From Macrostomum lignano (Eukaryota): DNA of 64,000 nucleotides. The position numbers were made by a program, and so were the translations under genes. The notes beneath the pieces are model-generated. The model was given only the letters and a program-made list of their open reading frames with translations. It made no database searches and was not told where the DNA came from. Positions 3,645 to 31,954 of this stretch are shown piece by piece; positions within the stretch are counted from its first letter, which is position 1, and every line of letters starts with the position of its first letter. Where the stretch lies: the NCBI GenBank assembly GCA_002269645.1, contig NIVC01001903.1:12546-76545 (forward strand), read 5' to 3'.

Positions 3645-4636
3645 TGAAGTACACGCTGTTTGCTTCCCGTATTAGGCCCTTGCGGATTACCTTAAACCTC
3701 GAGCCTCTTCAGTGGGAAGTCCTTTCAGCGCGCAGTAGCGTAGGTAGTGCTGCCACCAGTTCCTTCAGGTCTCGGCCTTCGATGAGGTGAGCTTCCCGTC
3801 GGAACGAAATAAACAAGTCAACGAACTCAGCACAGCGTGCAGATTTGCAGATTAATGAACAAGGCGTCCTGATCAGCAGATCCCCGCCGGGCTCAGGGGT
3901 GACTGGGAAGGCAGTGTTAGCCTCCCTTAGGCTTGGGCTTTAGTGGGGTCTCAGTCAGACCAGTACAAACGGATTCAGTACGCAAAGGGCACTTAGTTAG
4001 ACACTGACGCACACGGGTTCTTAGTGAATTCTCCGCAGATAAGAAGCCTTTCCTTGACGGAAACAAGGGGAGAGGGGTCCTATTTATAGCCGGGAAACAC
4101 CCACGCACAAGACCTCGTGACTTGTTCTATTTTTAGAACTGACGTCACTTGAGGTCTCGGGGCAGGGTCTCAGTGCGCGCAAGACCTCGTGACTCGTTCT
4201 ATTTTTAGAACTGACGTCACTTAAGGTCTCCGGCCAGAGTACACGCGGCTGTGACTCAGTTGCTATTTTTAGCAACATGAGTCACTCCTCTCCTTAGAGA
4301 AGGGAGGGGTCCGAAAGCACGTGATTCTCCCGGTAAACAGGGCCAACGAGTGCAGTAAACATGTTTACTGCACTTTAGGACTCGAAGAACGCAGAGTCTG
4401 TCATGTGACTTGCTCACATGACAGAGGAAAACGGGACGGGAACGAAACAGAGACAGCCCACAGCAGAGAAGCTGAGGGCTGAGAACAGAGACGCAGAAGG
4501 GCAGAACAGGCCAAGGGCAGCAACAGACGGGCCAAGGGGGCGGGAAGCTGACCAGCGGCAGACAGCAACCCAGGGCGAGGGCGAGGGAGACTGCTGACAA
4601 AGTGGGACGCCTAACACCAACTAGCGGATCACTACA
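3645..4636 (-). repeat. 5' LTR (992 bp) of the Gypsy element
   Basis: TG...CA ends with imperfect inverted repeat (TGTAGT/ACTTCA on the minus strand); TATA-like CTATAAATAG at 4080-4089; internal 72-bp duplication; homologous to 34452-35085. Confidence 0.85.
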
Positions 4637-5063
4637 AATATAAAAGCTTTTATACTATAGTTTAGATGGTACAGCATGGTATACTAGAAAAAAGACTCTT
4701 TTGTAATAATATGGTAAAAAATTAATAAAACAATAAAGGACCTTTTTGCAATTGTGACAATAAAAAACCATATTTGTAGCTATGAAATTTGAAATAAAAT
4801 GCTATTGACTTTGCTAAAAACTTTCCTATAAAATTTGGAAAAAGCCAAAATTTGTAACAATTGTACATAAAAATAAAGTTTTTTTTTCAAATTTCATAGT
4901 GCATGTAATTTAAAAGAATAAAATTATTGCAACATGTAATTTTGTATTTATAAAAGTTTTGAAGTTTTGATGGGTATAAGTTTGTGTGCCAAAAATTTAC
5001 TTGAGTTGAAAGTGGTATGCCAAAGTGGTTTATGCAAAAACAGTTAAACTATTCACTAGTATG

Positions 5064-6065
5064 TGTAACAGTTGCCTATTATTTTGCCTATTTGCCTAAT
5101 TTTGTCTATTTTGTCTATTGATTTCACATATAAATATGACTATTTTTCTAAAACTACAAGAAATTATCTGTGCGTACATAAATAAATATTTTATATCATT
5201 AGTAGTAATTATTAGTTTCGATTAGTGGCCTACCGTATAATCTAGTGCTTTATTAGTTTAAATGCATCCGCCATTTTGTTAGCAAATCCTATATAAGCAA
5301 GAAAATATATCGAGAAAGAAAATAACTTCCTGCTTCGTTTGCTGAGACCTCCGCTAGTCTAGTTATTCAGCGGTTGTAACTGAACATTGTTCTAAAAATA
5401 GCTCCGTCTTAGTCATTTAAAGGCGTTCCGCCTTTCTTCTCCTGCGAAGCTTGTACAGTTAGAAGTGTTTAAAACTTCTCTCCCCTTCCCCGGGACGTTC
5501 GGTCCTACCCCTGAGTTTTGGCTCTTCCCTTTCTCCCAGCGGAACTGGCGCCCGCCGCTCCTGCCCCTCCCCACTTCTAGTGGACAGTCTGTCTGCTCAG
5601 GTGTACAGCCTTATTCCCTCAGACATACAGTCTCCCCCGGCATCCCCGCCCCCAACCCTTCCTTGTAGAAATTTCCCACATTCATTAGGCAGATTGCCTT
5701 CTTATCTAATGCTGTATTAAATGGTCAGTCTACTCATGTCAGCATTCCCTATTAGTGTTTAGAAATTCCCCATTAGTGCGATTTTCCCAGGCAACTCTGA
5801 TCCATCGCGAAGCCCTTAATTCCCTCTCCCATCTATATTCCCCAGACTGAGAATAGGAAATTGTGTCTTGCCGCTCGGACACACCACGCCACCAGGAGCA
5901 ACCTACGGCTTACTCCTGTTAGTAGTATAAATTGCGCAGTTCGCCCCAAATCCTGAGAAACTCCCTAAAATCCCCGGTAAACCCTGTAACAATTTGGTGT
6001 CAGCAAAAGGATAAACTCCCCTCCCCCACAACCTCTACGACAACTTGGTAGCTAAGCAGTGGGAT
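5064..6065 (+). mobile_element. LTR (about 5064-5991) plus PBS-like sequence; remnant of an LTR element with no internal coding region
   Basis: Ends TGTAACAG...CTGTAACA are inverted-repeat-like; TGGTGTCAG (5995-6003) follows the CA; TATA-like CCTATATAAG near 5288; MEF2-like CTAAAAATAG at 5392-5401. Left boundary inferred. Confidence 0.55.
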
Positions 6066-6167
6066 TATTAACCAGAGAAGAAAGAGCCCTACAACATATG
6101 CCAGAAATTTCCTGTGTACCAGTAACAGTGGGTAACCTTTAAAGTGTGGCTTTTATATTATCACTTT

Positions 6168-6464
6168 CATACATGCGCAACCTCCAAATTTTGGTCGGCC
6201 ATGCGACTTAGTTTTAACAAAAATGCGACGTAGTTTTTGGCCAAAAATGCGACTTACATGTAAAAAAACCCGAAAGCAAAATTAACGCAACTTTGGGTAA
6301 ACGGCAGGAGTAACTATGACTATCTTATAAAGCCAAAATGCCTCGTCAGCTACATAGTACTACTACTCTGTGTTTTTTCGGGTTGGCATTTTTGCGACTG
6401 CCTTGGTTGGCCGCCAAATCGGTCGGCCGGATCGGCCGACTCGGCCGACTGTTGCGCATGTATG
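6168..6464. mobile_element. hAT-type MITE (297 bp)
   Basis: Perfect 14-bp TIR CATACATGCGCAAC; perfect 8-bp TSD ATCACTTT (6160-6167 and 6465-6472). Confidence 0.85.
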
Positions 6465-6483
6465 ATCACTTTTTATTTAAAGT

Positions 6484-7756
6484 CAGTGTTGGGCACTTCC
6501 GTTACCGAGTAACTTGCAAATGGTAACGCAAGTTACTTTTCCGTAAAGCGTTCCTTACGCAAGTTACTTTCCTATTTTGGTAACGGAGTAACGGTAAGTT
6601 ACTCAAATTTCGGAAGTCCGTTACAGTTACTTTGCAACAATCGCAATATTTAAATTTAAAACTGATATGCTTAGCTATTACTCCAGTTGTCACATTTTTA
6701 GCATTTTTCATTCCTAAATTCAAAACTAAGTGAATAATATCATACGGTATTACGCTGTAATTAATAAAGAAATACTTGAAACATGTTTTTACTTTGTTAT
6801 TTTCGGTAAAATATTTTTGCTTTTCGTTTTAAGTTAATAAAAATATTTTGTTTAGTTCTTAGAAACAAACAACCAAAGAAAGAAATTCATCTGTAGTCTC
6901 CACAAATCCACTCAGTGATCGACGTAGCCAGGAATTTTAATTTGGGGGGGGCGGGTTGGCCTGGCTGGCCATGCCTCATGCCATTGCCAATTTTAGCGCC
7001 GCAGGCACTCATTTTAGCGCCGCAAGCACTCATTTAAGCGCCGCAAGCACTCATTTAAGCGCCGCAGGCACTCATTTAAGCGCCGCAGGCACTCAATCGC
7101 CTCATGGTTTTTGGTACCCGCCACGCCCAACCCCACCCCCCCCCAGGTGGGGTGTCTTGCAGGTGGGGTGAAGTTGCCGCCCCAACGATTGTTAAGGCGG
7201 CCTCCCTAGCTACACCACTAAAGTCCACTGGCACTGCACTGCACTGCACAATTTAATATTAATGATAATAATTGAAAATAAATAAAAAGACTAGTAAAGC
7301 AGACTATAGAGTGGAGTAAAGCCAGGTACTTATTACGAGCGATGTATTATCAAGGACAACTGAAGTTACGTTAAGTTGTCCTTGTGTATTATAACTTATA
7401 ATGTTATTAAAAATTAAATTGCGTTTTGCCTTTAACGTTTCTGACCTTCAGCTTCTTTTCTTTTTACGGAAAGGGCCTAAAGTGATTAAAATTTAATACA
7501 GTTACTGAAATTAATGTTGTTGTATTCTTCCTCCTGGCTTTCGCGATCATTTGTGCTGTTCCAGCGCATTTGCAATGTTAAAAAAGCAGAAAATTTTGTT
7601 AATAACATAGGTAACGGAAGTAAGTAACGGAAGTAACTTAAAAGTTACCGGGTTTTTGTATAAAGTTACTAGGCTAACGTAAGTTACTTTTTATAAAGTG
7701 GTAACTTAAGTTACAGTAACGCAAGTTACTTTTTTTGAGTAACTTGCCCAACACTG
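6484..7756. mobile_element. Non-autonomous hAT element (1273 bp)
   Basis: 12-bp TIR CAGTGTTGGGCA; perfect 8-bp TSD TTTAAAGT (6476-6483 and 7757-7764); many subterminal GTAAC/GTTAC motifs. Confidence 0.9.
6913..7220. mobile_element. MITE nested in the 6484-7756 hAT element, containing 21-bp tandem repeats
   Basis: Degenerate TIR CAGTG..CGTAGC / GCTACACCACTA; near-TSD AATCCACT/AGTCCACT; repeats of TTTTAGCGCCGCAGGCACTCA, also seen near 34100-34160. Confidence 0.55.
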
Positions 7757-8166
7757 TTTAAAGTTGATATTATCAAAACTAAAAGCATAAAAAATTATAA
7801 GAAGAAAATTTAAACTAAGTTTCAAAAAACCTAGGCCTATTTTCTTAAAGGTTTTTAGAAAAAAACATTATAAACTTTTTTTGTTACTAATTATACTTTT
7901 ATTAATAAACATATTTATAAATTAATGAATTAATATACTTATTAATAATAATATTAATAATATTTAATTCCCTGTCTAGGGTAAAAAAGCACAAAATAAA
8001 ATTAGAGAAGAGCAAAGAAAGCAAGTGAAAGCTTTTGTTTTTATCCTAAACCACAAAACTACTGTTTTAAATAGAAATATTAGGTAAAAAAATTATTTTC
8101 ATCCATAATTCATGGAAGCAATTTAAAGATATCATAACGACATAAGAAAATTGATATCAGAATTAC

Positions 8167-8442
8167 CTCAGAAGGTTCGATGTTATAACACTCTGCAATC
8201 TTTGCATAAAGTTCTTTGACGTTTGTAAAGCAACTAATTATTCCTGTGGGGCTTCCATGAGCCAGTTGACAATGAAAATTATATTGTGGCCTTTGCGACT
8301 CTGGGCTTTCATCTGCACTTCCTGGTACTGCACCAGCTTGTTTGTGGGTTGCATTTGAAGTTTGTGTTGCATCGCGGGAAGGCTGAGCGTGCGTAGGGCT
8401 TTCTTTATTGCCATCTTTCTTTTTCTTACCGAAAAGAGGCAT
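8167..8442 (-). CDS. GIPC1: First coding exon of a GIPC-family PDZ adaptor; later exons not found in the window (presumably left of it)
   Basis: MPLFGKKKK start and FHCQLAHGSPTGIISCFTNVKELYAKIAE match the GIPC N-terminal GH1 motif; phase-0 donor GAG|GTAATT at 8166. Confidence 0.9.
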
Positions 8443-10119
8443 TTTGATTCTATACGCAGAAAAATTCGTAAAATATGCTTGCTTGCTTGCTTCAATAGTA
8501 AAAAACAACCCAGAGAAAACAAGTTAAACTTCAGTCAATCGGCGTGCCTAAAAGGCGTGGTCATTGACGTATTTGTGGCTATTTTGTAAATTTAGCGGTT
8601 TGTTATTTAACTTTCTATTTTTCTTGTACTTTTTATAATAGATTTAAAAGATAATAAATAGCATTGTATTTAAACTTTGTTATACATATGTTATACACCG
8701 GATCTGTATACCAAATCTGTATGCATAGCAAACAGGGGGTATTCAGTTCGCATATAAGATGTACCGGTATATATATATTATATTATATTTATACATATTA
8801 AAAATTTATAAAACTATAGTATATCAATCGGTAAATAAGATTTCGGACAGTTTACGAAGCTCAAGGACCTTTGAAGTATAGTTACATGTATATACATGTA
8901 CATTTCTCGACTCTCAATATACTACAAATCTAGCGAGATGTTTGTCTGTTTGCATTGTTTGTTGCGTATCTCCTCCCAGACTTCTAGCTATAAAAATTAA
9001 AACTCTGTGTGTCTGTCATTGAGGAAAGAATATAGAAATGGAGTGCTAATCTGAGCCCAGTTATTTTTGTTTCGCTCGATCTTCACTTTAAGAATCCCTC
9101 CCCCCGTTCCTTCCCCTACTAGACGTAATAGTACGGGACCATTAAATTGACAATATTACAGATTGGTACCGTATGTTAAAACGGCCCTTGACGGGCTACT
9201 AAAATTGACAACGTCACAGGAGGTATAAAGTTCTGCGGTTTTCTAAATTTCTAAATTAATGCCTAAACTTCAAATATTTAAGACTATCTGTATGCGAGTA
9301 CGAGAGCTATAGGTGTAGGCACTGTAGGGTTTTCACAAGAGTACATAGAAATGCTTTGCGGCGTGACTGTCTCCAGGGATTTGTAAAATGTTAGTTAGTG
9401 TTTTAGCACCTCAACTGAAAAGTCCTACATCGTCTATTGGTTCTTACGGCGGCTGTAGTGAGACTTCTTTCTTCTTTACCGAGTGCATTTGCCTTTGTCA
9501 ACTGAGGAGCGTCTATACTTTCGTACCGAGAGCTGGACAGTCCAAGCGAGAGCACTTCAACCGCTAAGTAACTGGGCTTAAACAAGCAAATCGCGATTGC
9601 AGCCGGACCTGTTGAATCGATTATATGGACCCAACACTCTATCGATATTAGTCTTAATTGTTTGCCTAAAGCAAATTTTCCTGCCAACATGCACATCGAT
9701 AAATGCAGCATTTCTAGCCAAGGGGAAGCTGTGTAGATAGGCTCAATGCTTTTAAATGTTTGCAGTGTAAGCTTGAACTGTGAAATAACGAATCGGTTAA
9801 AATCAAAGAGTATTGAGGTCGCCTAGTATAGAGTGCCAGTAAGGATGAAAATCTGAAGCCGATTTCTAGAATCCACCCACCCCCTCCAGTCACCAAGCTT
9901 TTTAGTCTATGGCACAAGTTGTGGCTAGAATGGTGTACAAAGCCGATGCTCGGTACATAATCACCATAATTCATCATCATAAATTATCAGTACATAATCA
10001 CAGCTCGTTCACGATAACATGAAAGCAGACAAATTTGCGATAACACGACTTGTGCAAGGATTTTTGTAGCTTTCATTCAGCAGTTCCTTGATCTGATGCT
10101 CTATTTTATGTCCATCAAT

Positions 10120-10441
10120 CTACAGTAAAAACAAGCCGATGATGGCAGCAGTAGCAACCACTCCGAACAGCGAAATAATCCGCTCAATTGCGCGTGCCGC
10201 GACGACTCATGTCCGAATCGTGGTGACGTTGGTGACGTGGTGACGTTACGGTACTGACGCAGAGCAGTCGGCCCACCAGGCATCGAACAAAGACAGCCCG
10301 AGTACATCCCGGCATGCGGCTGCCCTCCAGCCTGAAGTGGAACAGCATGACCAGCGATGTCAGCAGCAGCGACACGGTGGACAGCACCATGGCGGCCGTG
10401 ATGAACAGGGCGATGGCAGGCAACTTTTGCCACTTTTGCGA
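10120..10441 (-). pseudogene. 5'-truncated, frameshifted copy of the nAChR-like genes (M3 to M4 only)
   Basis: PAIALFITAAMVLSTVSLLLTSLVMLFHF nearly identical to the 12576 gene; frameshift before VVAARAIERIISLFGVVATAAII; no upstream homology. Confidence 0.8.
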
Positions 10442-12575: not shown

Positions 12576-13868
12576 TTAAGAAAACTGAAGATACGGCCCC
12601 ATCAGAAAGACTACAATTATGACGGCGGTAGCAACCACTCCGAACAGCGACAAGAATCTCTCGATCGCGCGGGCGGCCACCACCCAGTCTGAACCGACCG
12701 ATTTCTGTTCCGCCGCAGGCGGTTTCTGAACTCCGTCGCCGTCGCCCTCAGCCTCAGCCGGATTCTGCTGGCCCACCTGTGACGCTGTGGCGCCGCTGAC
12801 GCAGAGAAGGCGGCCCAGGCATCGAACAAAGACCGTCCGAGCGCATTTCGGCATGCGGCTGCCCTCCGGTCTGAAGTGGAACAGCATGACCAGCGATGTC
12901 AGCAGCAGCGACACGGTAGACAGCATCATGGCGGCCGTGATGAACAGGGCGATGGCGGGCATCTTGTGCGACTTCGGCAGGATTCCGTCCAGAAGCAGCA
13001 AGAACACGGTGTAGCTGAGCATGATTGTGATGCCGAATCCCAGCTTCTCACCGGACTCCAGGGGCAGAAAGTACACCAGCACTTGAAGCAAAGTTAGGAG
13101 CAACAAAGGCGTGATGATGTTGATGAAATAGTACGTTGACACTCGCTTCAAGTGCAATCGCAGAACAAAGGTCGAAAGTTCGGTCTCGTTGTGTCCTTCG
13201 ATTATAAAATATTTTTTGGTTTCCAAATCTGCTGTAGCATTTTTCAATATCCACTCGTTGCTAGGCTTGTAGATTCCTGTCACCCGCATGGGCATTGCGC
13301 TGCGAACAGGCCGCACTGCATCAGGATTGGCGTCAGTTGCAAGGAAGAACAGCAGCTCGCAAGTGTGCTGGTCGTACGGAAAGTCGGACATGTTGAATTG
13401 GCAAAAAAATTCGAACTCCCGGCGCCAGGATGAAGTAACCGTCGTCACGCTTGAACTCTTAGACATCAGTGTAAGTCGGATTCGAGGAATCAGAATCTGT
13501 TCATCGCCGTTACCGTTGTATGTCATGATGATTGGGTACCAAATTTTTGCAGGGTCCCAGCTAGTAGAACTGACGCCACCAAAGTCGGCAGGATTCCACA
13601 CGAGTCGCTCCTCTTCCCAGCTGACTTGAACGTAGGCAGCGATTTTGATGTTCTGCTTGGCAGTGTCCACTGAGACTAAATGGCTGACCATGATGTCTAA
13701 CGACACGTTGACTTTGTTTGTCTTGTTTAGTATTGGCAAAATAAATTGGCTGTAGTTTGCAACTTTGTTGTTCAGGTGCTGCATTAGCAGGACATCGTAA
13801 TCAGTAGCTAGTGTCGAGGCTAAGACCGAAACCAGCAGGATGAACGAGAATAACATTTTTTGTCTCAT
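12576..13868 (-). CDS. Intronless non-alpha nAChR-like Cys-loop ligand-gated ion channel subunit 1 (about 430 aa)
   Basis: Signal peptide; Cys-loop CQFNMSDFPYDQHTC; four TM segments; M2 GEKLGFGITIMLSYTVFLLLL; no vicinal Cys in loop C. Start ATG chosen at 13868 (upstream ATGs exist). Confidence 0.92.
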   Translation of the reverse strand: MRQKMLFSFILLVSVLASTLATDYDVLLMQHLNNKVANYSQFILPILNKTNKVNVSLDIMVSHLVSVDTAKQNIKIAAYVQVSWEEERLVWNPADFGGVSSTSWDPAKIWYPIIMTYNGNGDEQILIPRIRLTLMSKSSSVTTVTSSWRREFEFFCQFNMSDFPYDQHTCELLFFLATDANPDAVRPVRSAMPMRVTGIYKPSNEWILKNATADLETKKYFIIEGHNETELSTFVLRLHLKRVSTYYFINIITPLLLLTLLQVLVYFLPLESGEKLGFGITIMLSYTVFLLLLDGILPKSHKMPAIALFITAAMMLSTVSLLLTSLVMLFHFRPEGSRMPKCARTVFVRCLGRLLCVSGATASQVGQQNPAEAEGDGDGVQKPPAAEQKSVGSDWVVAARAIERFLSLFGVVATAVIIVVFLMGPYLQFS

Positions 13869-14239
13869 TCTGCAGTGCATTGCTGATCGCATAGACAACT
13901 GGTATGTCTGCTAAAATAGTCCTAATGCCGTTTCAGCCCGACCAGTTACAGGTTAGGCTCAAAGATCGCCTGAGAATCCGTTCGCTGCTTTTATTTTATT
14001 GGACAGATAGAGACGGCTTTTATCGCTATTGACACAAGAACGTAATGCAGCGCCAGTGTCATTAAATTACTACCGAGATATTTGATGAGTCTCTGATAAA
14101 TTATTTAGTTTGATTAATAATATTCCTTTCTCAGCAAAGCTATGGAATATAGCTCGTGCAAGCTTAATGGATAAATCTGTGTTAGATGTTGAAGAAAAAA
14201 GAGCAGAAATGGTTTAGAAATAACAATTATACCGATCGT

Positions 14240-14640
14240 TACCGACCGGGCGGAATGCGTGGTGGTCGCCTAGGTCGGTGCACTTGGCCGATTTGCGGGC
14301 CTCGACCGAGGTGGCAGCTGCGCTGTGGGCGGACGGTAGAGGCATGCAGGTGACTTGGGAAGCAGGTGTGCGTGATATAGTCGCGTCCCAAGCAACGGCT
14401 GCCCGCGCTCGAAAGCTGCCACCGTGGCGTCATCGAAGCGGCAAGAGATGGACAGCTCAATGTCCGAGAGGCGCGTGACCTCGCGGCTGCTTGGCAGACA
14501 GGTAAAAAAGGCGGCAGACTCTGGGATTGAGGCAGAGTGCAGCCTGGCCATGTCCCTTGGCTCCGAGAGGCTGGCAGTCAGCGCCAGATGGTGGGCAAGG
14601 AAAGCTGCTCTTGCCAGGAGCGGGTGTGAAGAAATGGAGC
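14240..14640 (-). mobile_element. Decayed, internally deleted 3' fragment of a restriction-like-endonuclease non-LTR retrotransposon (CRE/R2-like)
   Basis: Across frames: ARLHSASIPESAAFFTCLPSS..RLSDIEL, D.ATVAAFERGQPL.WDAT..HT, AAATSVEARKSAK..L...F.PV, resembling recalled RLE-clade C-terminal motifs. Confidence 0.5.
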
Positions 14641-14935
14641 ACGTATTTCTGTTAAATAAATATCTAAAGAAGTAATGGAGCACATTAGACGATAAACATA
14701 AAGAACTGAGTCACTGTACTTTATCATACAGAACAAATGAATCCTGAGGCATAGCAGACATATAAATGAAGCTTAATATAAAGTATTAATATAACGGTTG
14801 ACATTATTTACATTCAAATATTTTATTAGGCTATATCCAATATTTTCCCTTAATATCGCTAGGTCTATTCGAGAGAGCTATTTATTTGTCCCTAGACAAC
14901 TACGGTAAAATAATTCAGGAATGGTATGTACTCGT

Positions 14936-15229
14936 CCCGGGAAAAAACATGCCAAACTTCCCAAGTCAGCAATCATGTACATGTGCTTGGTTGACATTTT
15001 TGACTTACCAAGTTTGGGAAGTATCATTATCATGAACTGTCTACATCCAAGTACTTGGAAAGTACTTAAGAAGTGACTTAAGAAAACATTGCATACTCGT
15101 ACTTATAAAGTACCTATCGAATATAAACTTGGAAAACTTGAAAAGTACTTAGGCGATACTTGCCACGAGGTTGCATTGTTGACTTACCAAGTACTTGGCA
15201 AGTTTGGTTTGTTTGTTTTTCTCGGGGTA
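14936..15229. mobile_element. Probable MITE with imperfect TIRs and CCAAGT/ACTTGG subterminal repeats
   Basis: CCCGGGAAAAAACATGCCAAACTTCCCAAGT versus the reverse complement of the right end CCCGAGAAAAACAAACAAACCAAACTTGCCAAGT. Confidence 0.4.
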
Positions 15230-15768
15230 TTCCCCACTGGATACGAGAAGTCAAAACAACAACAACAGCAAATGTCCGAGTCCTTAGATGGCAGCGTAAC
15301 AGGGTTGCAAGAAGCGTCACCAGAATGTAGCTTTTGTCTTATTTCTAAAATAGCGAACGTACTAATTCAAAGATTTAAATTGCTGTGATATGACTAGTTT
15401 ATTTTTAATTTTTTAACAGTTTAGCTACGTCTCGTTTTTTGGGTGAGGCGTTGCGACAACATTTATATCTAGCTAACGAAAATATAATGTTCAAGAGGGT
15501 TTATCTGGATAAAGCATAATTGCGTGCAGCTGAGATCATAAGCATTTCTTGGGTGGACAAGGAGTACAGCGAGAGTGCAAGTTGAAATCTAGTAAACTTT
15601 ATTTATCGACCGAATCTACTGAAAATGTTTCGAAAAAGATCAAAACAATATTTAAAAAATAGGCTCATTCTTGAGTTAGCAATGGGTTAAATTTCAAACA
15701 AGATTATTTAAGCAGACAGTCCTAAATCCATTGCGCAGTTTTAGATTCTTCTTACGCTCGTATACAGC

Positions 15769-17073
15769 TTAGTCTTGATTTTGAATCATGGGTTTCAAAA
15801 CAAACACTCCGATGATTGCAGCTGTGGCGAAAACTCCCAGACCCACCATCAGCCTCTCAATCGCGTAGGAAGCCACAATCCATTCCGACTTCACCACGGG
15901 AGCTGAGTCGTCCATCTTGCGCACACTGGACTCGCTTGCCGCTGCGTCAGCAGTCGGAGTCTCACCGACCTGCGCACTGGACGAGCCGTTCACGCAGAAC
16001 ACGCGTCCAAGGAATCGGACAAAGAAGCCTCGGGCGCATGCGGGCATCTTGGTGCCCTCCGGAGCGTAGTGAAATCGCATGATTAGCGAAGTTAACAGCA
16101 GTGACACCGTTGACAGGATCATGGCAGACGTGATGAACGATGCAATAGCTGGTGTTGACTGCGACTTCGGCAGGATGCCGTCCAGAAGCAGCAGAAACAC
16201 GGTATAACTGAGCATGATTGTGATGCCGAATCCCAGTTTCTCGCCGGATTCGAGTGGTACAAAGTACACCAGCACTTGAAGCAGAGTCAACAGCAACAGC
16301 GGAGTGATTACGCTTATCAAATAGTACGTTGAAACTCTTTTAAACTGCACCTTGATGATATAAGATGGGAGCATTTGCTTCGCAGCTACTCCGCGAATCA
16401 AATTGTAAGCCCTATATTCAGCTTTTGAGGATGCATTCACTAATGTCCACTCGCTGCTCTCTGTGTATAGCGCCTTTATATTGAATGGGTAATTGGTCTT
16501 CGCTATTGGAATAACCATCGAATTTCCGTGCCCCTGGTCGCTGAAGAAGAACTCCAACTCGCAGTCGTGCTGATCCCAAGGGAATTTTGACACGTCAAAT
16601 TGGCAGGCGAATTCGAACTCGCGACGCCACATTGCAGTAACTTGCGTACTGTTCACTGTTGTCGACAAAAGATCTACCGGCATCTGCGGCTCAAGGAGCT
16701 GCCCATCTCCGATTCCATTATAAACTATTATGACGGGAAACCAGATCTCTGACGCGTCCCGGTTAATCACTTTCACGCCGCCAAACTTCTTCGGATCCCA
16801 AACCAGTCGATCCTCCTCCCACACAGCCTGAATGATTGCTGATATTTTTATGCTCTGCTTTGCCGTGTCCACAGACACAATCTGACACAGAAGCGAGTCC
16901 ATTACGATTTGAATGACCTTGTCCTTGTTAATTCTTGGCAACAGATTCGGACTGAAATAGCTGATGTTGTTCTTTAAATACGTGTCAAGTTCACCCTCGA
17001 AGTCCTGCTGTCCCTGGACACCAGCCGCTGTCAGCAATAGTGTGACGAAAATAGCAAACAGAGTTGGTTTCAT
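15769..17073 (-). CDS. Intronless non-alpha nAChR-like Cys-loop channel subunit 2 (434 aa)
   Basis: Signal peptide; Cys-loop CQFDVSKFPWDQHDC; M2 identical in protein to subunit 1; short M3-M4 loop. Confidence 0.93.
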   Translation of the reverse strand: MKPTLFAIFVTLLLTAAGVQGQQDFEGELDTYLKNNISYFSPNLLPRINKDKVIQIVMDSLLCQIVSVDTAKQSIKISAIIQAVWEEDRLVWDPKKFGGVKVINRDASEIWFPVIIVYNGIGDGQLLEPQMPVDLLSTTVNSTQVTAMWRREFEFACQFDVSKFPWDQHDCELEFFFSDQGHGNSMVIPIAKTNYPFNIKALYTESSEWTLVNASSKAEYRAYNLIRGVAAKQMLPSYIIKVQFKRVSTYYLISVITPLLLLTLLQVLVYFVPLESGEKLGFGITIMLSYTVFLLLLDGILPKSQSTPAIASFITSAMILSTVSLLLTSLIMRFHYAPEGTKMPACARGFFVRFLGRVFCVNGSSSAQVGETPTADAAASESSVRKMDDSAPVVKSEWIVASYAIERLMVGLGVFATAAIIGVFVLKPMIQNQD

Positions 17074-17880
17074 GTTTGACTGTCAGCTAGTTCTGCTTTG
17101 GTATGCCTCGGTTCTCAAGAGAAATTCAGCCTACTTTTGTTATAAATATGGAGTCTGTCCAAACAAAGGGTTTGTATGAAATTGATTGGCTAGCTGTGTG
17201 GCTTCTCACGGGAGTCACGCACATACAGCATGCACATTTGAGTGGTGCTTCTAACACAATGCCTACCTGAGAGGTAACAACTATACAAAGTGATTGATTG
17301 ATTTGAATAGGGAAATCAAGCAAACGGTCGCGCACAATCATATACATGTAGACGAGCTGATTAATAATCAATTCAGATGAAAAAATGGAAGCCATGATTG
17401 ATGCCCAAACCTATTTCAGTGGCCGTTCTAGTGCCTTTCAATTAACCATCATTAATTGTTTCGCTGTCGCAGCAATGAGCAGGTAAGAATGATGAGGGTT
17501 TGTCGGACGGAAAGCCAAGCCCACTAACCGATCTCATCGCAGATTAACAACGGCCCTTTTCTTTATTGACTCAATTACGTTACTTGCTTTATCAAACATT
17601 CTAAACTACTCATTGTAGCAAAAAATTTTTTTTGCTAACTTGTCTTTTTGGTGACATTATCGTTATATTGAAGATTATTCAGACAGAAGAAGTACTGGTG
17701 TGCAGAAAATGTAGCAGATAGCAGTAGTGCCTTATTAGGCAAAAATATAAATAGATTTCTAATAAATTGTTTCTTTTAGAATAATGATGCGTGATGCGCA
17801 TTTTCTCGCGCTGGATCCTCAAAAACAGAGAAAGATGTGACCTTCAGTGCAACTGTTAGCTGCAAAAGTGCAAATCCAAG

Positions 17881-19184
17881 TCAGCATTTGTGCGGCGAAC
17901 CCCAGTAGGGCTTGATGATGAGGCCACCCAGCAGGGCGGCTGTGGCTGCAACACCCAGAGCTACCATCAGCCGCTCGACAGACTTTGTTGCCACCGTCCA
18001 ATCCGATTGAATCCGGCTGGCGTCTTCATCCACTTTTCTAACGTTGGTCCGGCTATTGTCGCTATTTTCCGTCCGAACCGTCGCGTCGCTACCTTTCACG
18101 CACAGCAGACGGCCTAGAAACCGGACGAGAACGACTCTAAGGCAGGTTGGCATTCCATCATCTCCAGGCGTGAGGTGAAGTCGCATTGTCAAAGAAGTCA
18201 GTAGGAGAGATCCTGTGGACAGAATCATCGCAGACGTGATGAAATATGCTACAAATGGCAGCTTTTGTGACTTTGGTAGAATGCCGTCCAGGAGCAGCAG
18301 GAACACAGTGTAGCTGAGCATGATTGTGATGCCGAATCCCAGCTTCTCACCGGACTCCAGTGGCACAAAGTACACCAGCACTTGAAGAACAGACAACAAA
18401 ATGAGCGGTGCAATGATGTTCACGAAGTAATAATTTGATACTCGACAGATCTGAAGCCTTAATTCGTACGTTGGAAGCAGCGCCTTTCTCGAACCTTGAA
18501 CCAGAGCGTACTCCTTGAACTCTGCAGACGTGGAGAAGTTCAGAAGTGTCCATTCGCTGCTATTTTGGTATAGAACTAGCGGGTTATACGGAAACAGTTT
18601 GTTGACCTCAGGTTGTACCACAGAATTGTTCCGTTCAGGATCGATGAAGCAGAATGATATAGAGCAGTCGTGCATGTCCACGGGAAACTGGCTTACGTCA
18701 AACTTGCACGTGAATTCGAACTCGCGACGCCATAGAGCCGTGACTTGGGTTAAGTTGGGTGATCGCGACGTTAGGAAAACTGGCGTTTTTGATTGCAGCA
18801 CCTGATCCTGTCCTACACCGTTGTACATCAAAATCAAAGGGCTCCAGATTTCATCAGCTTTCCAATTAATAACGGAACATTACCGAATTTGCTCGAATTC
18901 CAAACCAGCCGCTCCTCTTCCCATTTTCCTTGAAGCAATGCGCTTACACGTATCGTCTGCTTCGCCGTGTCGACCGCAGTAATGTGGGTTAGCAGAGTGT
19001 CCATCCTGACAGCAATTTTAGCTTTCGGCTCCACCTTGGGCAGGAGCAGGGGACTGTAATTGGTGATGTTGTTCTTCAAGTACTGTATCACGTTAGCCTG
19101 GTGGTCCACCCAACCATAGCTGTTGCAGAAGAAACAGACAGCAAGAACAGTAAGAACGGCTGAGAGATTTCGTAGCAGAGCCAT
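17881..19184 (-). CDS. Intronless non-alpha nAChR-like Cys-loop channel subunit 3 (about 434 aa), with an apparent 1-bp deletion at about 18876
   Basis: ORFs 18834-19205 and 17881-18837 join as KFGNVSVINWKADEIWSPLILMYNG if one T is added; Cys-loop CKFDVSQFPVDMHDC; same M2. Confidence 0.88.
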
Positions 19185-20668
19185 GGCGCTAAGCTTTCTC
19201 TGCACTGATCAAAACGGTTCAGAGCTCTGGACACGCTCATCAACAGTTATATCCTAAATGAAATTATATCTTCGCTTATTTCCAGTGTTTGCGATCGATA
19301 GACTGCATACACGGTGGCTAATAAAATGTTTGCCCATCAGCGGTCTCCATCAACTGCATCTGAGCCTTCCGACTCACAGTTAGAAAGCGCGATTGTCGTG
19401 TCAGTCTGTTTAAACTGCAATTTATTTGTCCGGCATTATCCTGAGCAAACAATTGGCCATTAGCGTTGCCAAGCTGACGATTATCAGGTTCGCGACTTGG
19501 TTAAGGCAAACAGACGAACATGCAGGCGAGAACTCAGAATAAATTGAATAAATTGATAACAGCTACGTGGGTAGAATTGCTTTACTACAGTTTCACGTGC
19601 ATGTAACACTTCATTGCATTTGAGTTAACTACAACTGCGAGTAAACATGTTCGAAATTTCATGTGAATATTTGTGTCACCACAAATTTGCGGTGGAATCA
19701 GAATTGAATTGTTTCCAGATTACGTTTGCACAACTGCTCTATTTCAAGCCCTGCAGGTGCGCAGCGAAGATGCGTTTTGCCTTTAACTCTTCCTTTTCCA
19801 TTACACCGCTCCCAAAAGGTTTAGCTGCCTTTCTCTGTACTAGTTAGACACTTCAGTAGCTGGCCTAAGTAGGTGAGAGCCGCTCCTGTTATGCCTGTCA
19901 ATTGGCTTCAATTGTCTTCGAGACATTTTTTACACAGTTACACAATTATTGTATCACAAAACACCCCCCTCTGGTAGCCTAGTATTCCCGCGGTAGCTTC
20001 TTCAATTCAAGAACTGATGCTGTTATATGCTTTGGTATAATGTAACTTGGGCTGCTCTGATGGCGAGCTAAGGAGCTTAAAACAATATATTTAATCGCCC
20101 TGCCTCTTAGCACGTAGACGGTGGAGGTCAGGGCCATAGACATGGATATACTTAGTAAGAGTCCATCCACATCAGATGCTTTAGTTGACTTTGAATCGAT
20201 GGATGGAATCGATTCTATTAGCATTTAAAAGAAGACAGTTTGTGACATCTTGCTGGGTAAAATAGAAAAAAAGCAATTCCTTCCATCCTTAAGATTTAGC
20301 CAGGTTCTTAACAAGATGCCGATTAGTATAAAACGTGACGCTTATTAGGGCCCTAACCAACGCGCAAAATCCTAAATTAAATTACAATTATTCTGAAGAC
20401 TGAAGACATCAATGCTGAAACTCCTTATTAGAATAATCATCACCTCCTGCAGCGCTGCAGGGGCAACAGTCTGGGCCGCAGATGATGAAGTGCAGATCAA
20501 TAAGAGCCGTGGGCAACAACTTTAGTTGGTCATACTTCTATTCATAGATAGATAAGATAGATAAGATTTATAGATAAGAAACTTAGCGCAAATCAATCTC
20601 TTCCTCTCGATCGTTTGCTCCGCTGATTGCGTAACAATGTCCTCAAAATTCTTTCCCTGCATCGGCAG

Positions 20669-25712: not shown

Positions 25713-28700
25713 TTACACGGGACACTTGTAAACATTGAAGCAGTGATTTCCTGTGTCAACAACCCCACCAATTGGTTGGCTTTGGTGCAGTAAGCCAGGC
25801 CTTGAGGCCCATACAGCTGGTCTCCGGCTGTGTTCACTGAGGCCAAGAAGCTGCCTTCGCTGTTGAACACCTGCGGGTCAGTGAAAAGTCGCATTTATTT
25901 TATTTATTTTTAAATTGCCATTAAGCTACAGTACTAGTGGCAAGGCTATTGAAATCTGCTCAGATGTCAGTGGTTCATATGAGGAAGTTCTCCAGACTGC
26001 TAGGTTTGAGGGGCCTAATTTCTTAGATGCCAAAGCTTCATGATAAACTGCTCAGATGAAATGCCAAAGCTTCATGGTAAACTGCTCAGATGAAATGCCA
26101 AAGCTTCATGGTAAACTGCTCAGATGAGATGCCAAAGCTTCATGATAAACTGCTCAGATGAAATGCCAAAGCTTCATGGTAAACTGCTCAGATGAGATGC
26201 CAAAGCTTAATGGTAAACTGCTCAGATGAGATGCCAAAGCTTCATGGTAAACTGCTCAGATGAGATGCCAAAGCTTCATGGTAAACTGCTCAGATGAGAT
26301 GCCAAAGCTTCATGGTAAAGTGCTCAGATGAGATGCCAAAGCTTCATGGTAAACTGCTCAGATGAGATGCCAAAGCTTCATGGTAAACTGCTCAGATGAG
26401 ATGCCAAAGCTTAATGGTAAACTGCTCAGATGAGATGCCAAAGCTTCATGGTAAAGTGCTCAGATATTCTACAATACTTGATGCTGAACTGCTCAGATGC
26501 TAAGAATTGATGTTAAAGCAAGGCACGTGTAGGAGGTTCTCCTACGAGCAATAAAAACGTAATACGACTTTTTGGTAGTGAAAGTCTTACTGCAATGCTT
26601 GAACTTCATGCTCCCCAAAGGAGCTATAGTGTGCTAGGGTAAACTCATTCAACCTCTATAGCCTCTATTACAGCAAATTTACCTGGATAGACGAGCTGCC
26701 CCAGTCCGCCACCATGATGTTGTCCTGCAGGTCCACAGCCACCCCAGTCGGTGCGTTCAACCTGCCGGCCTCGCTGCCCGCGCAGCCGATGCAAAACTGA
26801 AATTGGCCCTGACTATCGAAAATCTTTACGCAATGATTGTGAAAATCCGACACAATCATCTGGTCCTTGGAGTTGACGGCGACGTAGTGCGGACCAGCGA
26901 ATTGGTCGTCGCCGGTGCCGCGGCTGCCGAACTTGTGCACCAGCTTGCCGGTGTGCTTGAACAGCAGCACGCTGCAGGCTTTGTTGTCGACAACGGCAAT
27001 GCGACCGTCGGACAGCACCGCGATGCCTTTTGGGCCCGCGAGCCGGTTGCCGCCAAACTTTGACAGGTATTTACCGTCCGGACTGAACACGTGGATGCAG
27101 CGACTGTCGAAGTCGCTAACCAAGTAACTGCCCGTAGCTGTCTCGGCCACGCCAATCGGCCTCTGAACCTGGCCGGGGTCGCGGCCGCGCAAGCCGAAAC
27201 GGGCAAGAAATTCCCCTCCAGAGCCGAACACCTGCACGTTGGCGTTGTTTGAATCGGCAACGACTATGCGACCCTCTCGTGTGACGCACAGGCCCTGCGG
27301 ATTGTTGAACTCTCCGTGGCCGCGACCGCGACTGCCAACCTTCTGCACCATGTCGTCTTCAACCTGGAGTTTTGAGATGAGTATTGGCTTAACTCATTCG
27401 ACAAGACAATGCCTAATGTTTTTTAATCGTCACTTGTCGAATTTACATGTAGTAAATGACAATCATCACTGACAAACATCATCATCACTGACAATGACAA
27501 ACATTAGACAATCATCACCTAGAGCACTCTCTTTAATATCAAGCAACAATCATCAGCACATTGAGCACTCTCCTCAGCATCAAGCAACAATCATCACCTT
27601 GAGCACTCTCCTCAACATCGAGCAACAATCATCACCTTGAGCACTCTCTTTAGTATCAAGCAACAATTGATGAGGACGCACTTTTTTCCAAACTTCACGC
27701 TCGCACATGGGCTCTAAACTTACTAGCCTACTAACAACAGGCTATGGGAATTTTTTCTTTTCTTTATGTAATTTTTCTAGAATTCATACTAGTTATTACT
27801 TGTCGTTATAATAACATAGGTGCGGCTTTTGGGTCATAAATCATTGCTTTCGAACTGGCCTGACAGCCACCTGCGCCTCACTCAATTGAGATTGGCGCCA
27901 GATGGTCTGAGAGGATGCGGGCAGTAGCTTTTTTCTCATCATTTTTACAGGCCATCAAGATTTATGAGGTCAGGGCCAGTTGTTCGTGTTTACTCAAGCG
28001 TGTGACAGCTTTGACAGCTATGCGTTTTACCCCTAAAAGTTCTTTGGGATTAGCGATTAGCGATTTCTCTTCATTATCTTCACTTTCTACTTAATAAGAG
28101 CTTTCTAATGTATATTTTTTCATTAATTTTTGTCATTCCTACGTGAAAGGTCATAAATCATTATGTAGCGATTTTGAGTGATTTATGACCGCACCTGTCG
28201 TATTTTTATGGCCCCGAGGGAACTGATAGGATCTTCTAGTCACGTGAGTTTGGGTGGCGACAAGCTCAGCCAATCAGAAAATTTGACGTGCGTTATAACA
28301 AATCGGCTCAGCCAATCAGCGTCGAGGTGTTCCATTATAACAAATTGCGGTCCAGTTGGCGGCTATTTAAACCGGTGTTTTTGGCCCGCTCGGACTCAAC
28401 CTACTGCTCCGCCTCCTGGGACTTTGGCCTAACTTAGACCTCCCGGAGCTCGACCGTCGTCTCTTGATCCCCGGATCGCGACTCCCCCCATCATCATCAA
28501 GGACGAATCCCCCCGGCCGTCAGCAGCGAACATCAAGATTAAGAACATCACCTGCTAGCTACCTGCGAAGGTTGTGACATCAGCATCATCCCAGGCCTAC
28601 AGCTGCGAAGCACTAAGCCGATTAGGTCCCTGTGGATTACCTGGTCTCGGGCTGTTGAGTTTCTGATTGGTTGGGTGAGAGGCTACCTAGACTTTCTTGA

Positions 28701-31700: not shown

Positions 31701-31954
31701 CGCTCGATTTGATCCAACACTTCGCGGCGTTGAACCTCGGCTGCGGCGCGGATTCTGTCGAGCGCGTCGCGACGATTCCGCAGCGCCTCTAGCGAGTCGG
31801 CCAGGGCGGCGCGCGACTCAGCGATGGCTTCAGCGTCGCCGCCAGTAGCTTCAGACGCCGTGGCATCGTCGGTGCAGGAGCCGGCGACGCTGCTGGTGGT
31901 CTCTTCGAAGCTCGGCTGACTCGTCAAGTCGTCGTGCGTCTGGTCGTGTTCCAT
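25713..31954 (-). CDS. TRIM2/TRIM3-like protein: coiled coil, filamin repeat, six NHL repeats. Exons 31954-31406, 30524-29910, 27363-26683, 25870-25713 (about 667 aa); no RING or B-box seen
   Basis: NHL motifs NAPTGVAVDLQDNIMVADWG and LYGPQGLA; filamin LSVKMLGEHIRGSPFTVRA; all introns GT-AG phase 0; the last exon needs one extra G at 25763-25766 to read VVDTGNHCFNVYK. Confidence 0.88.
26025..26470. repeat. 34-bp minisatellite in TRIM intron
   Basis: Unit AAACTGCTCAGATGAGATGCCAAAGCTTCATGGT. Confidence 0.95.
27505..29790. repeat. 38-bp minisatellite (27505-27667 and 29653-29790) split by an LTR insertion
   Basis: Unit CAACAATCATCACCTTGAGCACTCTCCTGAACATCAAG on both sides of the insertion. Confidence 0.9.
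27668..29652 (+). mobile_element. Long solo-LTR-like insertion (1985 bp)
   Basis: TGATGAGG...CCTATCA inverted ends; 4-bp TSD CAAT; two CTCAGCCAATCAG boxes (28265, 28307) and TATTTAAA (28364); no coding potential. Confidence 0.75.
31005..31400. repeat. 42-bp minisatellite built from subunits related to the foldback TIR of 35514-36427
   Basis: Unit GAATCTCGTCGGAAGAATCTCGTCGGGAAAATATCTTCCCGG; compare GGGAAAATCTCGGCGG in the foldback arms. Confidence 0.9.

What the first reader, a model, noticed from the sequence alone, without database searches (positions are those of the whole stretch)
12576..19184. Tandem array of intronless nAChR-like channels lacking the acetylcholine-binding site: candidate chemosensory receptor family
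Seen: three head-to-tail single-exon Cys-loop genes with signal peptides, an identical M2 preceded by GEK, and short (about 60-70 aa) M3-M4 loops. Their extracellular domains are strongly diverged: no loop-C vicinal cysteines, no loop-B Trp (FFLATD / FFFSDQ / FCFIDP where nAChRs have FGSW), and a variable loop-D position (Y/I/L). Established: the -1' Glu marks cation-selective Cys-loop pores, and octopus chemotactile receptors are tandem, intronless, atypical nAChR derivatives lacking the canonical ACh site. Inference: this is an independent expansion with a conserved pore and diversified ligand pockets, possibly sensing environmental chemicals.
Basis: partly seen in the sequence, partly recalled or inferred. 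Interest (0 to 1): 0.82.

Follow-up and report, generated by a model that had tools for sequence, protein, structure and literature searches.

The report
Orphan nicotinic-like channel genes, flatworm
Three neighbouring intron-free genes in the flatworm Macrostomum lignano encode very divergent relatives of nicotinic acetylcholine receptor subunits; they keep a cation-channel pore but have lost the acetylcholine-binding residues, a pattern already known from molluscs and annelids, and nothing yet shows what they sense.

Summary
On the minus strand lie three head-to-tail single-exon Cys-loop genes: g3 17881-19184, g2 15769-17073 and g1 12576-13892. All have Neur_chan_LBD and Neur_chan_memb domains, hydrophobic N-termini, an identical M2 after GEK, and M3-M4 loops of about 57-65 aa.

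Two corrections. In this window g3 carries a 1-nt deletion at 18873/18874 that splits its ORF. A 5'-truncated, frameshifted fourth copy lies at about 10123-10435.

The organism is Macrostomum lignano. A second copy of the whole array, 94-96% identical, has all three genes intact. Comparing the two copies gives dN/dS of 0.08-0.37, so the genes are under purifying selection.

The four known paralogues are 45-55% identical to each other and form an isolated long-branch clade. The next-best protein among 1.84 billion representatives scores 191 bits against about 730-770 for members. The closest solved relative is alpha7 nAChR.

Loop-B Trp, loop-A Asp, loop-D Trp, loop-C Tyr195 and the vicinal Cys pair are lost. 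Glu -1', Leu 9' and the gating elements are kept.

A lineage-specific orphan clade with a conserved pore and variable pocket loops is supported. "Expansion" is modest, and a chemosensory role has no evidence either way. This is a new member of a known kind.

The parts
17881..19184 (-). g3: single-exon nAChR-like Cys-loop subunit gene, 434 codons once one base is restored. In this window a 1-nt deletion disrupts the frame.
   Evidence: Split ORFs 18834-19205 and 17881-18837. Frames rejoin as ...KFGNV[P]VINWKADEIW..., matching g2. The copy in L001 at 7884-9185 is an intact 434-aa ORF, 95% identical. Pfam LBD and TMD.
18873..18874 (-). Site of the 1-nt deletion in g3. It is either a real frameshift in this copy or an assembly indel.
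   Evidence: Window AATGTT-CCGTT against L001 AATGTCACCGTA. The N-terminal part is 311 nt, i.e. 103 codons plus 2 nt. Another assembly's protein for g1 (P0011) carries a frameshift that this window lacks, so indel errors occur at this locus.
15769..17073 (-). g2: intact single-exon gene for a 434-aa subunit. It is 99% identical (3 differences) to PAA92206.1, BOX15_Mlig033226g1, 'hypothetical protein' of Macrostomum lignano.
   Evidence: ORF. Pfam LBD 1.1e-24, TMD 5.1e-21. Cluster member PAA92206.1. Best PDB match alpha7 nAChR, 3.5e-40. AF2 model has the pLGIC topology, and Foldseek top hits are nAChRs. dN/dS against the L001 copy is 0.08.
12576..13892 (-). g1: intact single-exon gene for a 438-aa subunit, counted from the first ATG. 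The signal-peptide-like core starts at the fourth in-frame Met, MLFSF...
   Evidence: ORF. Pfam LBD 4.1e-28, TMD 2.1e-22. The L001 copy at 12789-14102 is intact and 95% identical; dN/dS 0.37.
10123..10435 (-). Pseudogene relic of a fourth copy. Only M3 to M4 remain, with a frameshift and a deletion in the loop. It is closest to g1.
   Evidence: tblastn hits at 60% identity. Translation gives KLPAIALFITAAMVLSTVSLLLTSLVMLFHF... in one frame and VVAARAIERIISLFGVVATAAIIGLFL in another. The relic is also present in L001 at 16369-16671.
16162..16257 (-). g2 segment encoding the pore region, M1-M2 linker plus M2 (PLESGEK...LPKS). The equivalent segments are g1 12969-13064 and g3 18268-18363.
   Evidence: 32 codons are identical at the protein level in g1, g2 and g3, with pS 0.35-0.50 between them. 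Glu -1', Leu 9', and no Pro-Ala-Arg anion motif.
16534..16605 (-). g2 Cys-loop (CQFDVSKFPWDQHDC) followed by loop B (ELEFFFSDQ), which lacks the canonical Trp. The equivalent in g1 is 13332-13403; the g3 Cys-loop is at 18664-18708.

Best explanation
This is a small tandem cluster in the free-living flatworm Macrostomum lignano: three genes and one decayed relic. The whole cluster is present a second time in the genome as a roughly 95%-identical copy.

The genes encode a lineage-restricted, fast-evolved clade of nicotinic-receptor-derived Cys-loop subunits.

Shown:
- They have the complete architecture of a pentameric ligand-gated channel.
- They carry the cation-selective pore signature (Glu -1', Leu 9').
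- They retain the elements that couple the extracellular domain to the pore: the beta1-beta2 loop, the Cys-loop FPxD motif, the pre-M1 Arg and the M2-M3 Pro.
- They are under purifying selection.
- They have lost the residues that make the acetylcholine site: loop-B Trp, the loop-A Asp that positions it, loop-D Trp, loop-C Tyr195 and the Cys-Cys pair.

Inferred:
- They arose from a retroposed, intron-free nAChR-like gene that then duplicated stepwise in tandem, as in molluscs.
- They assemble as homo- or heteropentamers with each other, given the identical pore lining.
- They open a cation pore in response to something other than acetylcholine, bound at a remodelled and largely aliphatic pocket whose walls (loops B, C, D, F) differ between paralogues.

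The ligand and the cells that express these genes are unknown. A chemosensory role is possible but has no support yet.
For: Identity and organism:
- Pfam LBD and TMD domains.
- g2 clusters with PAA92206.1 of M. lignano.
- The second array copy lies on GCA_002269645.1 contig NIVC01000059.1.

nAChR affinity:
- Best PDB sequence hits are alpha7 (3.5e-40) and other nAChR subunits; 5-HT3A reaches only 6.5e-24.
- The AF2 model has mean pLDDT 76.9, and Foldseek top hits are alpha4beta2, alpha7 and muscle nAChR with TM-scores 0.68-0.74.

Isolation:
- In an exhaustive HMMER search of 1.84e9 representatives, members score about 730-770 bits and the next single-domain hit scores 191 bits.
- NJ monophyly is 100/100 with an unstable sister group.
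- The nearest named proteins come from corals, amphioxus, a mite, molluscs and annelids; none is from a flatworm.

Functionality:
- dN/dS between the window and L001 copies is 0.37, 0.08 and 0.28 for g1, g2 and g3. Binomial p for the nonsynonymous deficit is 0.0027, 1.9e-5 and 5.4e-5.
- M2 is identical at the protein level while pS is 0.35-0.50.
- W111, P113, P165, D167, R246, P258, L288 and P302 are invariant even against distant homologues.

Lost ACh site:
- The family keeps 2 of 6 canonical positions; 63 of 113 nearest homologues keep all 6.

Pocket variability:
- Loops B, C, D and F have 2 of 66 invariant positions against 50 of 157 elsewhere in the extracellular domain, p = 5e-7.

Intron-free in an intron-containing genome:
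- The genome averages about 5 introns per gene (PMC5730564).

Separate transcription units are plausible:
- TATA-like motifs lie 70-100 nt upstream of each ATG, and AATAAA lies 166-314 nt after each stop.
Against: - No functional, ligand or expression data exist for any member.
- Only the g2 copy is a called gene in the NCBI annotation of the second array, which the genome paper says derives from the transcriptome assembly (PMC5730564). Transcription of g1 and g3 is therefore unproven.
- g3 in this window is frameshifted.
- Loops C and F vary in all pLGIC families, so part of the 'pocket variability' is generic.
- g1 and g3 show only moderate constraint in the extracellular domain (omega about 0.4 for g1).
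- Retroposition is inferred only from the lack of introns. No poly(A) remnant or target-site duplication survives, as expected given saturated dS.
- Loss of binding residues also fits a non-binding accessory subunit.
Confidence: 0.62

Rival explanations
1. Chemosensory receptors. The subunits would be expressed in peripheral sensory cells and gated by environmental or prey-derived, possibly hydrophobic, molecules. This would be convergent with the cephalopod chemotactile receptors.
For: - Shared syndrome with CRs as described in PMC11526382 and bioRxiv 2025.03.03.641191: nAChR-derived, intronless, ACh site lost, cation channel.
- Aromatic-box positions are replaced mostly by aliphatic residues.
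- Pocket loops differ between paralogues.
- The clade is lineage-restricted.
Against: - There is no expression evidence of any kind.
- Only four paralogues are known, a very small repertoire for a chemoreceptor family.
- g2's extracellular domain shows strong recent purifying selection, 0 nonsynonymous against 10 synonymous changes, and no sign of diversifying selection.
- The same sequence syndrome occurs in many orphan lophotrochozoan nAChR-like genes whose roles are unknown or have been linked to development, immunity and stress (PMC6896357) and in the orphan Alpo4 (PMC10338036).
Confidence: 0.15
2. Non-binding accessory or structural subunits. They would co-assemble with canonical alpha-type subunits into ordinary ACh-gated heteromeric receptors, contributing pore and interface but no agonist site. 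This is the role of the vertebrate muscle beta1 subunit, and of gamma/delta/epsilon on the principal side.
For: - The pore and gating elements are conserved and selected while agonist-site residues are dispensable.
- From my own knowledge of the sequences, not checked here: vertebrate beta1, gamma, delta and epsilon also lack the loop-B Trp and the Cys-Cys pair.
- An identical M2 among paralogues fits interchangeable positions within a pentamer.
Against: - The loop-D Trp used by complementary subunits is also lost.
- The clade is extremely divergent, about 25% identical to any nAChR, so interfaces with canonical subunits are unlikely to be preserved.
- Structural subunits of essential receptors usually have recognisable orthologues in related taxa. 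None was found.
Confidence: 0.17
3. Decaying retrogene copies with no function, in other words pseudogenes in the making.
For: - g3 is frameshifted in this window.
- A truncated relic sits next to the array.
- g1 and g3 are not called genes in the NCBI annotation of the second copy.
- In bivalves, intron-poor nAChR genes more often lack expression (PMC6896357).
Against: - The ORFs, 434-438 codons long, remain open after a divergence old enough to saturate synonymous sites.
- All three are intact in the second array copy.
- The nonsynonymous deficit is significant for each gene.
- 32 M2 codons have no amino-acid change despite 35-50% synonymous-site differences.
Confidence: 0.05

Closest known systems
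Intronless, tandemly arrayed nAChR gene expansions of molluscs and annelids (Jiao et al. 2019, PMC6896357)
   Same: Lophotrochozoan. nAChR-derived. Single-exon genes in head-to-tail arrays, with occasional degenerate fragments inside the arrays. Lineage-specific clustering of paralogues, high sequence divergence and unknown ligands.
   Different: Copy number is tiny here: four paralogues and one relic, against 99-217 genes in bivalves. Flatworms were not mentioned in that paper. The Macrostomum clade has no detectable orthologues or stable sister group among those expansions.
Cephalopod chemotactile receptors (CRs; CRT1)
   Same: nAChR-derived cation channels, intronless, with the ACh-binding site lost and the orthosteric pocket remodelled (PMC11526382; bioRxiv 2025.03.03.641191).
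   Different: The origin is independent, in a flatworm rather than a cephalopod. CRT1's pocket is still built from aromatic residues (Y58, W122, F124, F192) that are under positive selection. Here the equivalent canonical positions are mostly aliphatic and no positive selection is detectable. CR expression in sucker sensory cells and gating by hydrophobic ligands are demonstrated; nothing comparable is known here. No CR sequence was available for direct comparison.
Alpo4, orphan nAChR-like receptor of the annelid Alvinella pompejana (PDB 8BX5; PMC10338036)
   Same: An isolated, fast-evolving lophotrochozoan nAChR-like subunit without the loop-C Cys-Cys pair, not activated by ACh or serotonin, ligand unknown. 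It appears among the PDB sequence matches of g2 at E = 8.9e-26.
   Different: Alpo4 retains the aromatic cage, including the loop-B Trp (W159) and the loop-D Trp (W65). The Macrostomum proteins have lost both.
Vertebrate alpha7 nAChR, the closest solved structure
   Same: Best sequence match (E = 3.5e-40) and among the best structural matches (TM-score about 0.7). It shares the SGEK motif, Leu 9', the Cys-loop FPxD motif, loop-A Tyr93 and loop-C Tyr188.
   Different: Only about 24% identical. W149, W55, Y195, D89 and the Cys-Cys pair are replaced. The M3-M4 loop is about 60 aa; in the alpha7 chain the same stretch (residue 336 to about 450) is about 115 aa.

Membership tests
Cys-loop / pentameric ligand-gated ion channel superfamily | Neur_chan_LBD extracellular domain followed by a Neur_chan_memb domain with four transmembrane helices | tested here: met
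   Pfam hits above the gathering score for g1, g2 and both halves of g3, apart from a sub-threshold LBD hit in the C-terminal piece. The AF2 model shows a beta-sandwich plus helices at 248-269, 276-300, 309-335 and 397-431.
Cys-loop / pentameric ligand-gated ion channel superfamily | Disulfide Cys-loop C-x13-C with an FPxD motif | tested here: met
   CQFNMSDFPYDQHTC, CQFDVSKFPWDQHDC and CKFDVSQFPVDMHDC. Both Cys are present in 112 of 113 homologues.
Cation-selective branch (nAChR / 5-HT3 / ZAC) | Glu at M2 -1', no Pro insertion or Ala-Arg at -2' to 0', and Leu 9' gate | tested here: met
   SGEKLGFGITIMLSY... in all members. E -1' is present in 107 of 113 homologues and L 9' in 100 of 113.
Acetylcholine-gated nicotinic receptors (agonist-binding subunits) | Aromatic box: loop-A Tyr93, loop-B Trp149, loop-C Tyr188 and Tyr195, loop-D Trp55 (alpha7 numbering) | tested here: not met
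   Only Tyr93 and Tyr188 are kept. Trp149 becomes A/S/I/N, Tyr195 becomes L/L/L/I, and Trp55 becomes Y/I/L/F.
Acetylcholine-gated nicotinic receptors (agonist-binding subunits) | Vicinal Cys-Cys at the tip of loop C (alpha-type), and the loop-A Asp of the WxPD motif | tested here: not met
   No CC in any member, against 65 of 113 homologues. The Asp is replaced by I/V/L/E, against D in 101 of 113.
Acetylcholine-gated nicotinic receptors | Orthology to a characterised nAChR subunit clade | tested here: not met
   The family is monophyletic on a long stem, and its sister group changes between bootstrap replicates. The best outside score is 191 bits against about 730-770 inside. The tree was neighbour-joining only, on the nearest 113 hits.
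Acetylcholine-gated nicotinic receptors | Gating by acetylcholine | not testable with these tools
   Needs electrophysiology.
Cephalopod chemotactile receptors | Membership of the cephalopod CR clade | not tested
   No CR sequence could be retrieved; CRT1 was not among the 60 PDB matches listed. Membership is implausible because the host is a flatworm, and the unstable sister group argues for an independent origin.
Cephalopod chemotactile receptors | Intronless genes with a lost ACh site | tested here: met
   The feature definition is from PMC11526382.
Cephalopod chemotactile receptors | Diversifying selection on pocket residues | tested here: inconclusive
   dS between paralogues is saturated. 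Between the two recent array copies omega is 0.08-0.37. Variable positions are concentrated in loops B, C, D and F, but that does not separate relaxed constraint from positive selection.
Cephalopod chemotactile receptors | Expression in peripheral sensory cells and gating by poorly soluble environmental ligands | not testable with these tools
   No expression or ligand data found.
Lophotrochozoan intronless tandem nAChR expansions | Single-exon coding sequence, head-to-tail tandem arrangement, and paralogues clustering by lineage | tested here: met
   Adjacent genes are the most similar pairs: g2-g3 55%, and the relic is closest to g1.
Lophotrochozoan intronless tandem nAChR expansions | Large copy number (tens to hundreds) | tested here: not met
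   Only g1, g2, g3, P0002 and one relic were found in the protein collections. The M. lignano genome itself could not be searched, so unannotated copies may exist.

The most novel reading that the evidence does not exclude
A flatworm has independently turned nicotinic-receptor-derived, intron-free channel genes into peripheral chemoreceptors. This would be a second invention, outside cephalopods, of 'chemotactile-type' receptors, with a shared pore and paralogue-specific ligand pockets.
Probability: 0.12. Interest if true: 0.75.

Novelty: new member of a known kind. Interest (0 to 1): 0.35.

Why it matters
The array adds a flatworm example to a recurring theme. In lophotrochozoans, nicotinic-type subunits are repeatedly retroposed, duplicated in tandem and stripped of their acetylcholine site.

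If the ligand were found, it would show what such orphan channels are for. Macrostomum lignano has an established transgenesis method (PMC5730564), which would make that test feasible.

As it stands, the finding is a clean annotation result. It names three genes and one relic, corrects the 'hypothetical protein' label of PAA92206.1, and flags two unannotated paralogues in the public assembly. It is not a new kind of system.

Tried and rejected
- Gene conversion as the cause of the identical M2: rejected, because 35-50% of synonymous sites differ within those 32 codons.
- A short intron instead of a frameshift in g3: rejected, because the reading frame continues in conserved sequence (VINWKADEIW, matching g2 VINRDASEIW) and the second genomic copy has one extra base and an open frame.
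- Domain-wise dN/dS among paralogues: not informative, because dS is saturated in the extracellular domain. It was replaced by the comparison of the window with the second array copy.
- The two word-indexed homologue searches found only nine proteins each. The exhaustive HMMER search was needed. Its long top hits of 800-1200 aa are fused tandem gene models, not closer relatives.
- Exact look-ups of the window's g2 protein and of P0002 found no contig.
- Attempts to obtain an octopus CR sequence or the CR papers failed.
- Literature searches for the gene id, for M. lignano nAChRs and for expression atlases found nothing relevant.
- 5-HT3-like identity: rejected, because nAChR subunits score far better.
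- Anion-selective flatworm ACC-type channels: rejected on the GEK pore motif.

Full report
**What is in the sequence**

Three open reading frames with Cys-loop receptor features lie head-to-tail on the minus strand:
- g3, 17881-19184
- g2, 15769-17073
- g1, 12576-13892

The spacers between them are 807 and 1876 bp. Pfam finds Neur_chan_LBD followed by Neur_chan_memb in each.

Each coding sequence starts with a hydrophobic, signal-peptide-like N-terminus. Each is bounded by an in-frame stop 4-9 codons upstream of the ATG. Each is followed by an AATAAA 166-314 nt after the stop, and TATA-like motifs lie 70-100 nt upstream of each ATG. The coding sequences are therefore complete in one exon, and the genes look like separate transcription units. 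That last point is inference.

First, g3 is split into two ORFs in this window by a 1-nt deletion between 18874 and 18873.

Second, a fourth copy lies 2.1 kb downstream of g1 at about 10123-10435. It is 5'-truncated and frameshifted, retains only M3 to M4, and is closest to g1.

**Organism and a second copy of the array**

The g2 protein clusters at 90% identity or more with PAA92206.1, 'hypothetical protein BOX15_Mlig033226g1' of Macrostomum lignano.

That protein is encoded on contig NIVC01000059.1 of assembly GCA_002269645.1 (locus L001). L001 holds the whole array again at 94-96% nucleotide identity, including the relic.

In L001 all three genes are intact, including g3 as a continuous 434-codon ORF. 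Only the g2 copy is an annotated gene there.

M. lignano is a recent hidden polyploid with 180 Mb of duplicated blocks at least 95% identical (PMC5730564; PMC10468722), which explains the two copies.

A protein from another assembly (P0011) is g1 with a frameshift that this window does not have. Assembly indels therefore do occur at this locus. Whether the g3 deletion is real or an artefact cannot be decided here.

**Are the genes functional?**

Comparing the window copy with the L001 copy gives:

| Gene | dS | dN/dS |
|---|---|---|
| g1 | 0.060 | 0.37 |
| g2 | 0.037 | 0.08 |
| g3 | 0.077 | 0.28 |

In the extracellular domain, g2 has 10 synonymous and 0 nonsynonymous changes. The deficit of nonsynonymous changes is significant for each gene: p = 0.0027, 1.9e-5 and 5.4e-5.

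Among the paralogues, synonymous sites are saturated in the extracellular domain (pS 0.74-0.80), so the duplications are old. Even so, the ORFs remain open.

The 32 residues PLESGEK...LPKS, covering M2 and its flanks, are identical in g1, g2 and g3 while 35-50% of their synonymous sites differ. The identity is therefore kept by selection and not by recent gene conversion.

**What kind of channel**

- The best solved relatives by sequence are alpha7 (3.5e-40) and other nAChR subunits. 5-HT3A is far weaker at 6.5e-24.
- An AlphaFold2 model of g2 (mean pLDDT 76.9) has the standard beta-sandwich and helices M1-M3, MX and MA/M4. Its best structural matches are alpha4beta2, alpha7 and muscle nAChRs, with TM-scores 0.68-0.74 at 20-26% identity.
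- The pore has Glu -1', Lys 0', Thr 6' and Leu 9', with no anion-type motif.
- Coupling elements are invariant even against distant homologues: W111, P113, the Cys-loop P165 and D167, the pre-M1 R246, and P302.

**The agonist site**

I compared the family with the 113 nearest single-domain nAChR-like proteins:

| Position (alpha7 numbering) | Background, of 113 | Family (g1/g2/g3/P0002) |
|---|---|---|
| Loop-B Trp149 | W in 94 | A/S/I/N |
| Loop-A Asp89 | D in 101 | I/V/L/E |
| Loop-D Trp55 | W in 81 | Y/I/L/F |
| Loop-C Tyr195 | aromatic in 96 | L/L/L/I |
| Vicinal Cys-Cys | present in 65 | absent |
| Loop-A Tyr93, loop-C Tyr188 | mostly kept | kept |

Sixty-three of the 113 keep all six canonical positions. 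Twelve keep two or fewer, as this family does, so such degeneration is uncommon but not rare.

Among the four paralogues, loops B, C, D and F have 2 invariant positions of 66, against 50 of 157 in the rest of the extracellular domain (p = 5e-7). Loops A and E are conserved.

**Relatives**

An exhaustive HMMER search of 1.84 billion representative proteins found, at family level, only:
- P0002, a fourth full-length paralogue 45-53% identical to g1-g3;
- P0011, a fragment of g1;
- P0014, a fragment of g2.

 The next-best single-domain score is 191 bits, against about 730-770 for members.

The nearest named proteins are alpha7-like or alpha10-like predictions from corals, Nematostella, amphioxus, a starfish, a mite, a chiton, bivalves, annelids and gastropods. 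None is from a flatworm.

In a neighbour-joining tree the family is monophyletic in 100 of 100 replicates on a long stem, and its sister group is unstable.

There is a caveat. Representatives collapse anything more than 50% identical, and other Macrostomum proteomes may be missing from the collection. 'Restricted to M. lignano' therefore means 'no relative seen elsewhere', not proven absence.

**Interpretation**

The best-supported reading is a small, lineage-restricted clade of orphan, cation-selective, nAChR-derived subunits. They remain under selection but cannot bind acetylcholine in the canonical way.

The lack of introns stands out in a genome averaging about five introns per gene. The tandem layout, with neighbours most similar to each other and a decayed fragment at one end, repeats the pattern described for mollusc nAChR expansions: retroposition followed by stepwise tandem duplication (PMC6896357).

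I infer that the subunits assemble with each other, given the identical pore lining, and that they respond to a non-ACh ligand at a remodelled, mostly aliphatic pocket.

Three rivals remain:
This is compatible with the sequence but has no evidence, and it rests on a repertoire of only four genes and on strong recent purifying selection in g2.
- Functionless retrocopies, which the selection tests argue against.

**Comparison with known systems**

The array is the same kind of thing as the intronless tandem nAChR-like genes of molluscs and annelids. It resembles the orphan receptor Alpo4 (PMC10338036), but Alpo4 keeps the aromatic cage.

It shares a syndrome with the cephalopod chemotactile receptors: nAChR-derived, intronless, ACh site lost, cationic (PMC11526382; bioRxiv 2025.03.03.641191). 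It cannot be filed with them. The origin is independent, the CRT1 pocket is aromatic and positively selected, and sensory expression and ligands are unknown here. No CR sequence could be obtained for a direct test.

**Verdict**

The chemosensory part is untested. This is a new member of a known kind, of moderate interest.

Noticed in passing
L001 7884-9185 and 12789-14102 (GCA_002269645.1 NIVC01000059.1): The public M. lignano annotation calls only the g2 homologue. The intact g3 and g1 homologues beside it (434 and 438 codons) are unannotated.
   Followed up: partly
window 48289-52374 (-): A 1361-aa uninterrupted ORF of a Ty3/gypsy-type LTR retrotransposon, with gag-like region, aspartyl protease, RT, RNase H and integrase. 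It looks recently active.
   Followed up: partly
window 969-3553 (-): A second retroelement: a gag-like ORF with a CCHC zinc knuckle, overlapping a pol ORF that runs into RT and is cut short.
   Followed up: partly
window 60844-64000: More than 3 kb of a (TCTCC)n pentanucleotide satellite running to the end of the window. It explains the extreme GC and AT skew there.
   Followed up: partly
window 26025-26465, 31004-31403, 32965-33459, 40357-41048, 42584-43067, 43616-44464, 45549-46889: A dense series of minisatellites (periods 20-45 nt) and a (TGTC)n array. Some lie inside apparent ORFs. This fits the very repeat-rich M. lignano genome.
   Followed up: no
window 56383-60066 (-): A 1227-aa uninterrupted ORF, about 67% GC, encoding a WD40 beta-propeller protein. 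This is another long intron-free coding region, so single-exon genes are not confined to the receptor array.
   Followed up: partly
window 26668-32011 (-): ORF pieces with NHL repeats (26668-27351), a filamin repeat (29898-30524) and an upstream ORF with no Pfam match (31346-32011). Together they look like exons of a TRIM-NHL-type gene with introns.
   Followed up: partly
window about 4636-9114 (-), matching L001 18377-20240: The region downstream of the relic matches the part of L001 where a GIPC1-like PDZ gene is called, so the flank is conserved between the two array copies.
   Followed up: no
window 38813-39550 (+): An ORF with a RING/U-box-like zinc-binding domain, preceded by a 45-nt tandem repeat that encodes a proline-rich repeat.
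   Followed up: no
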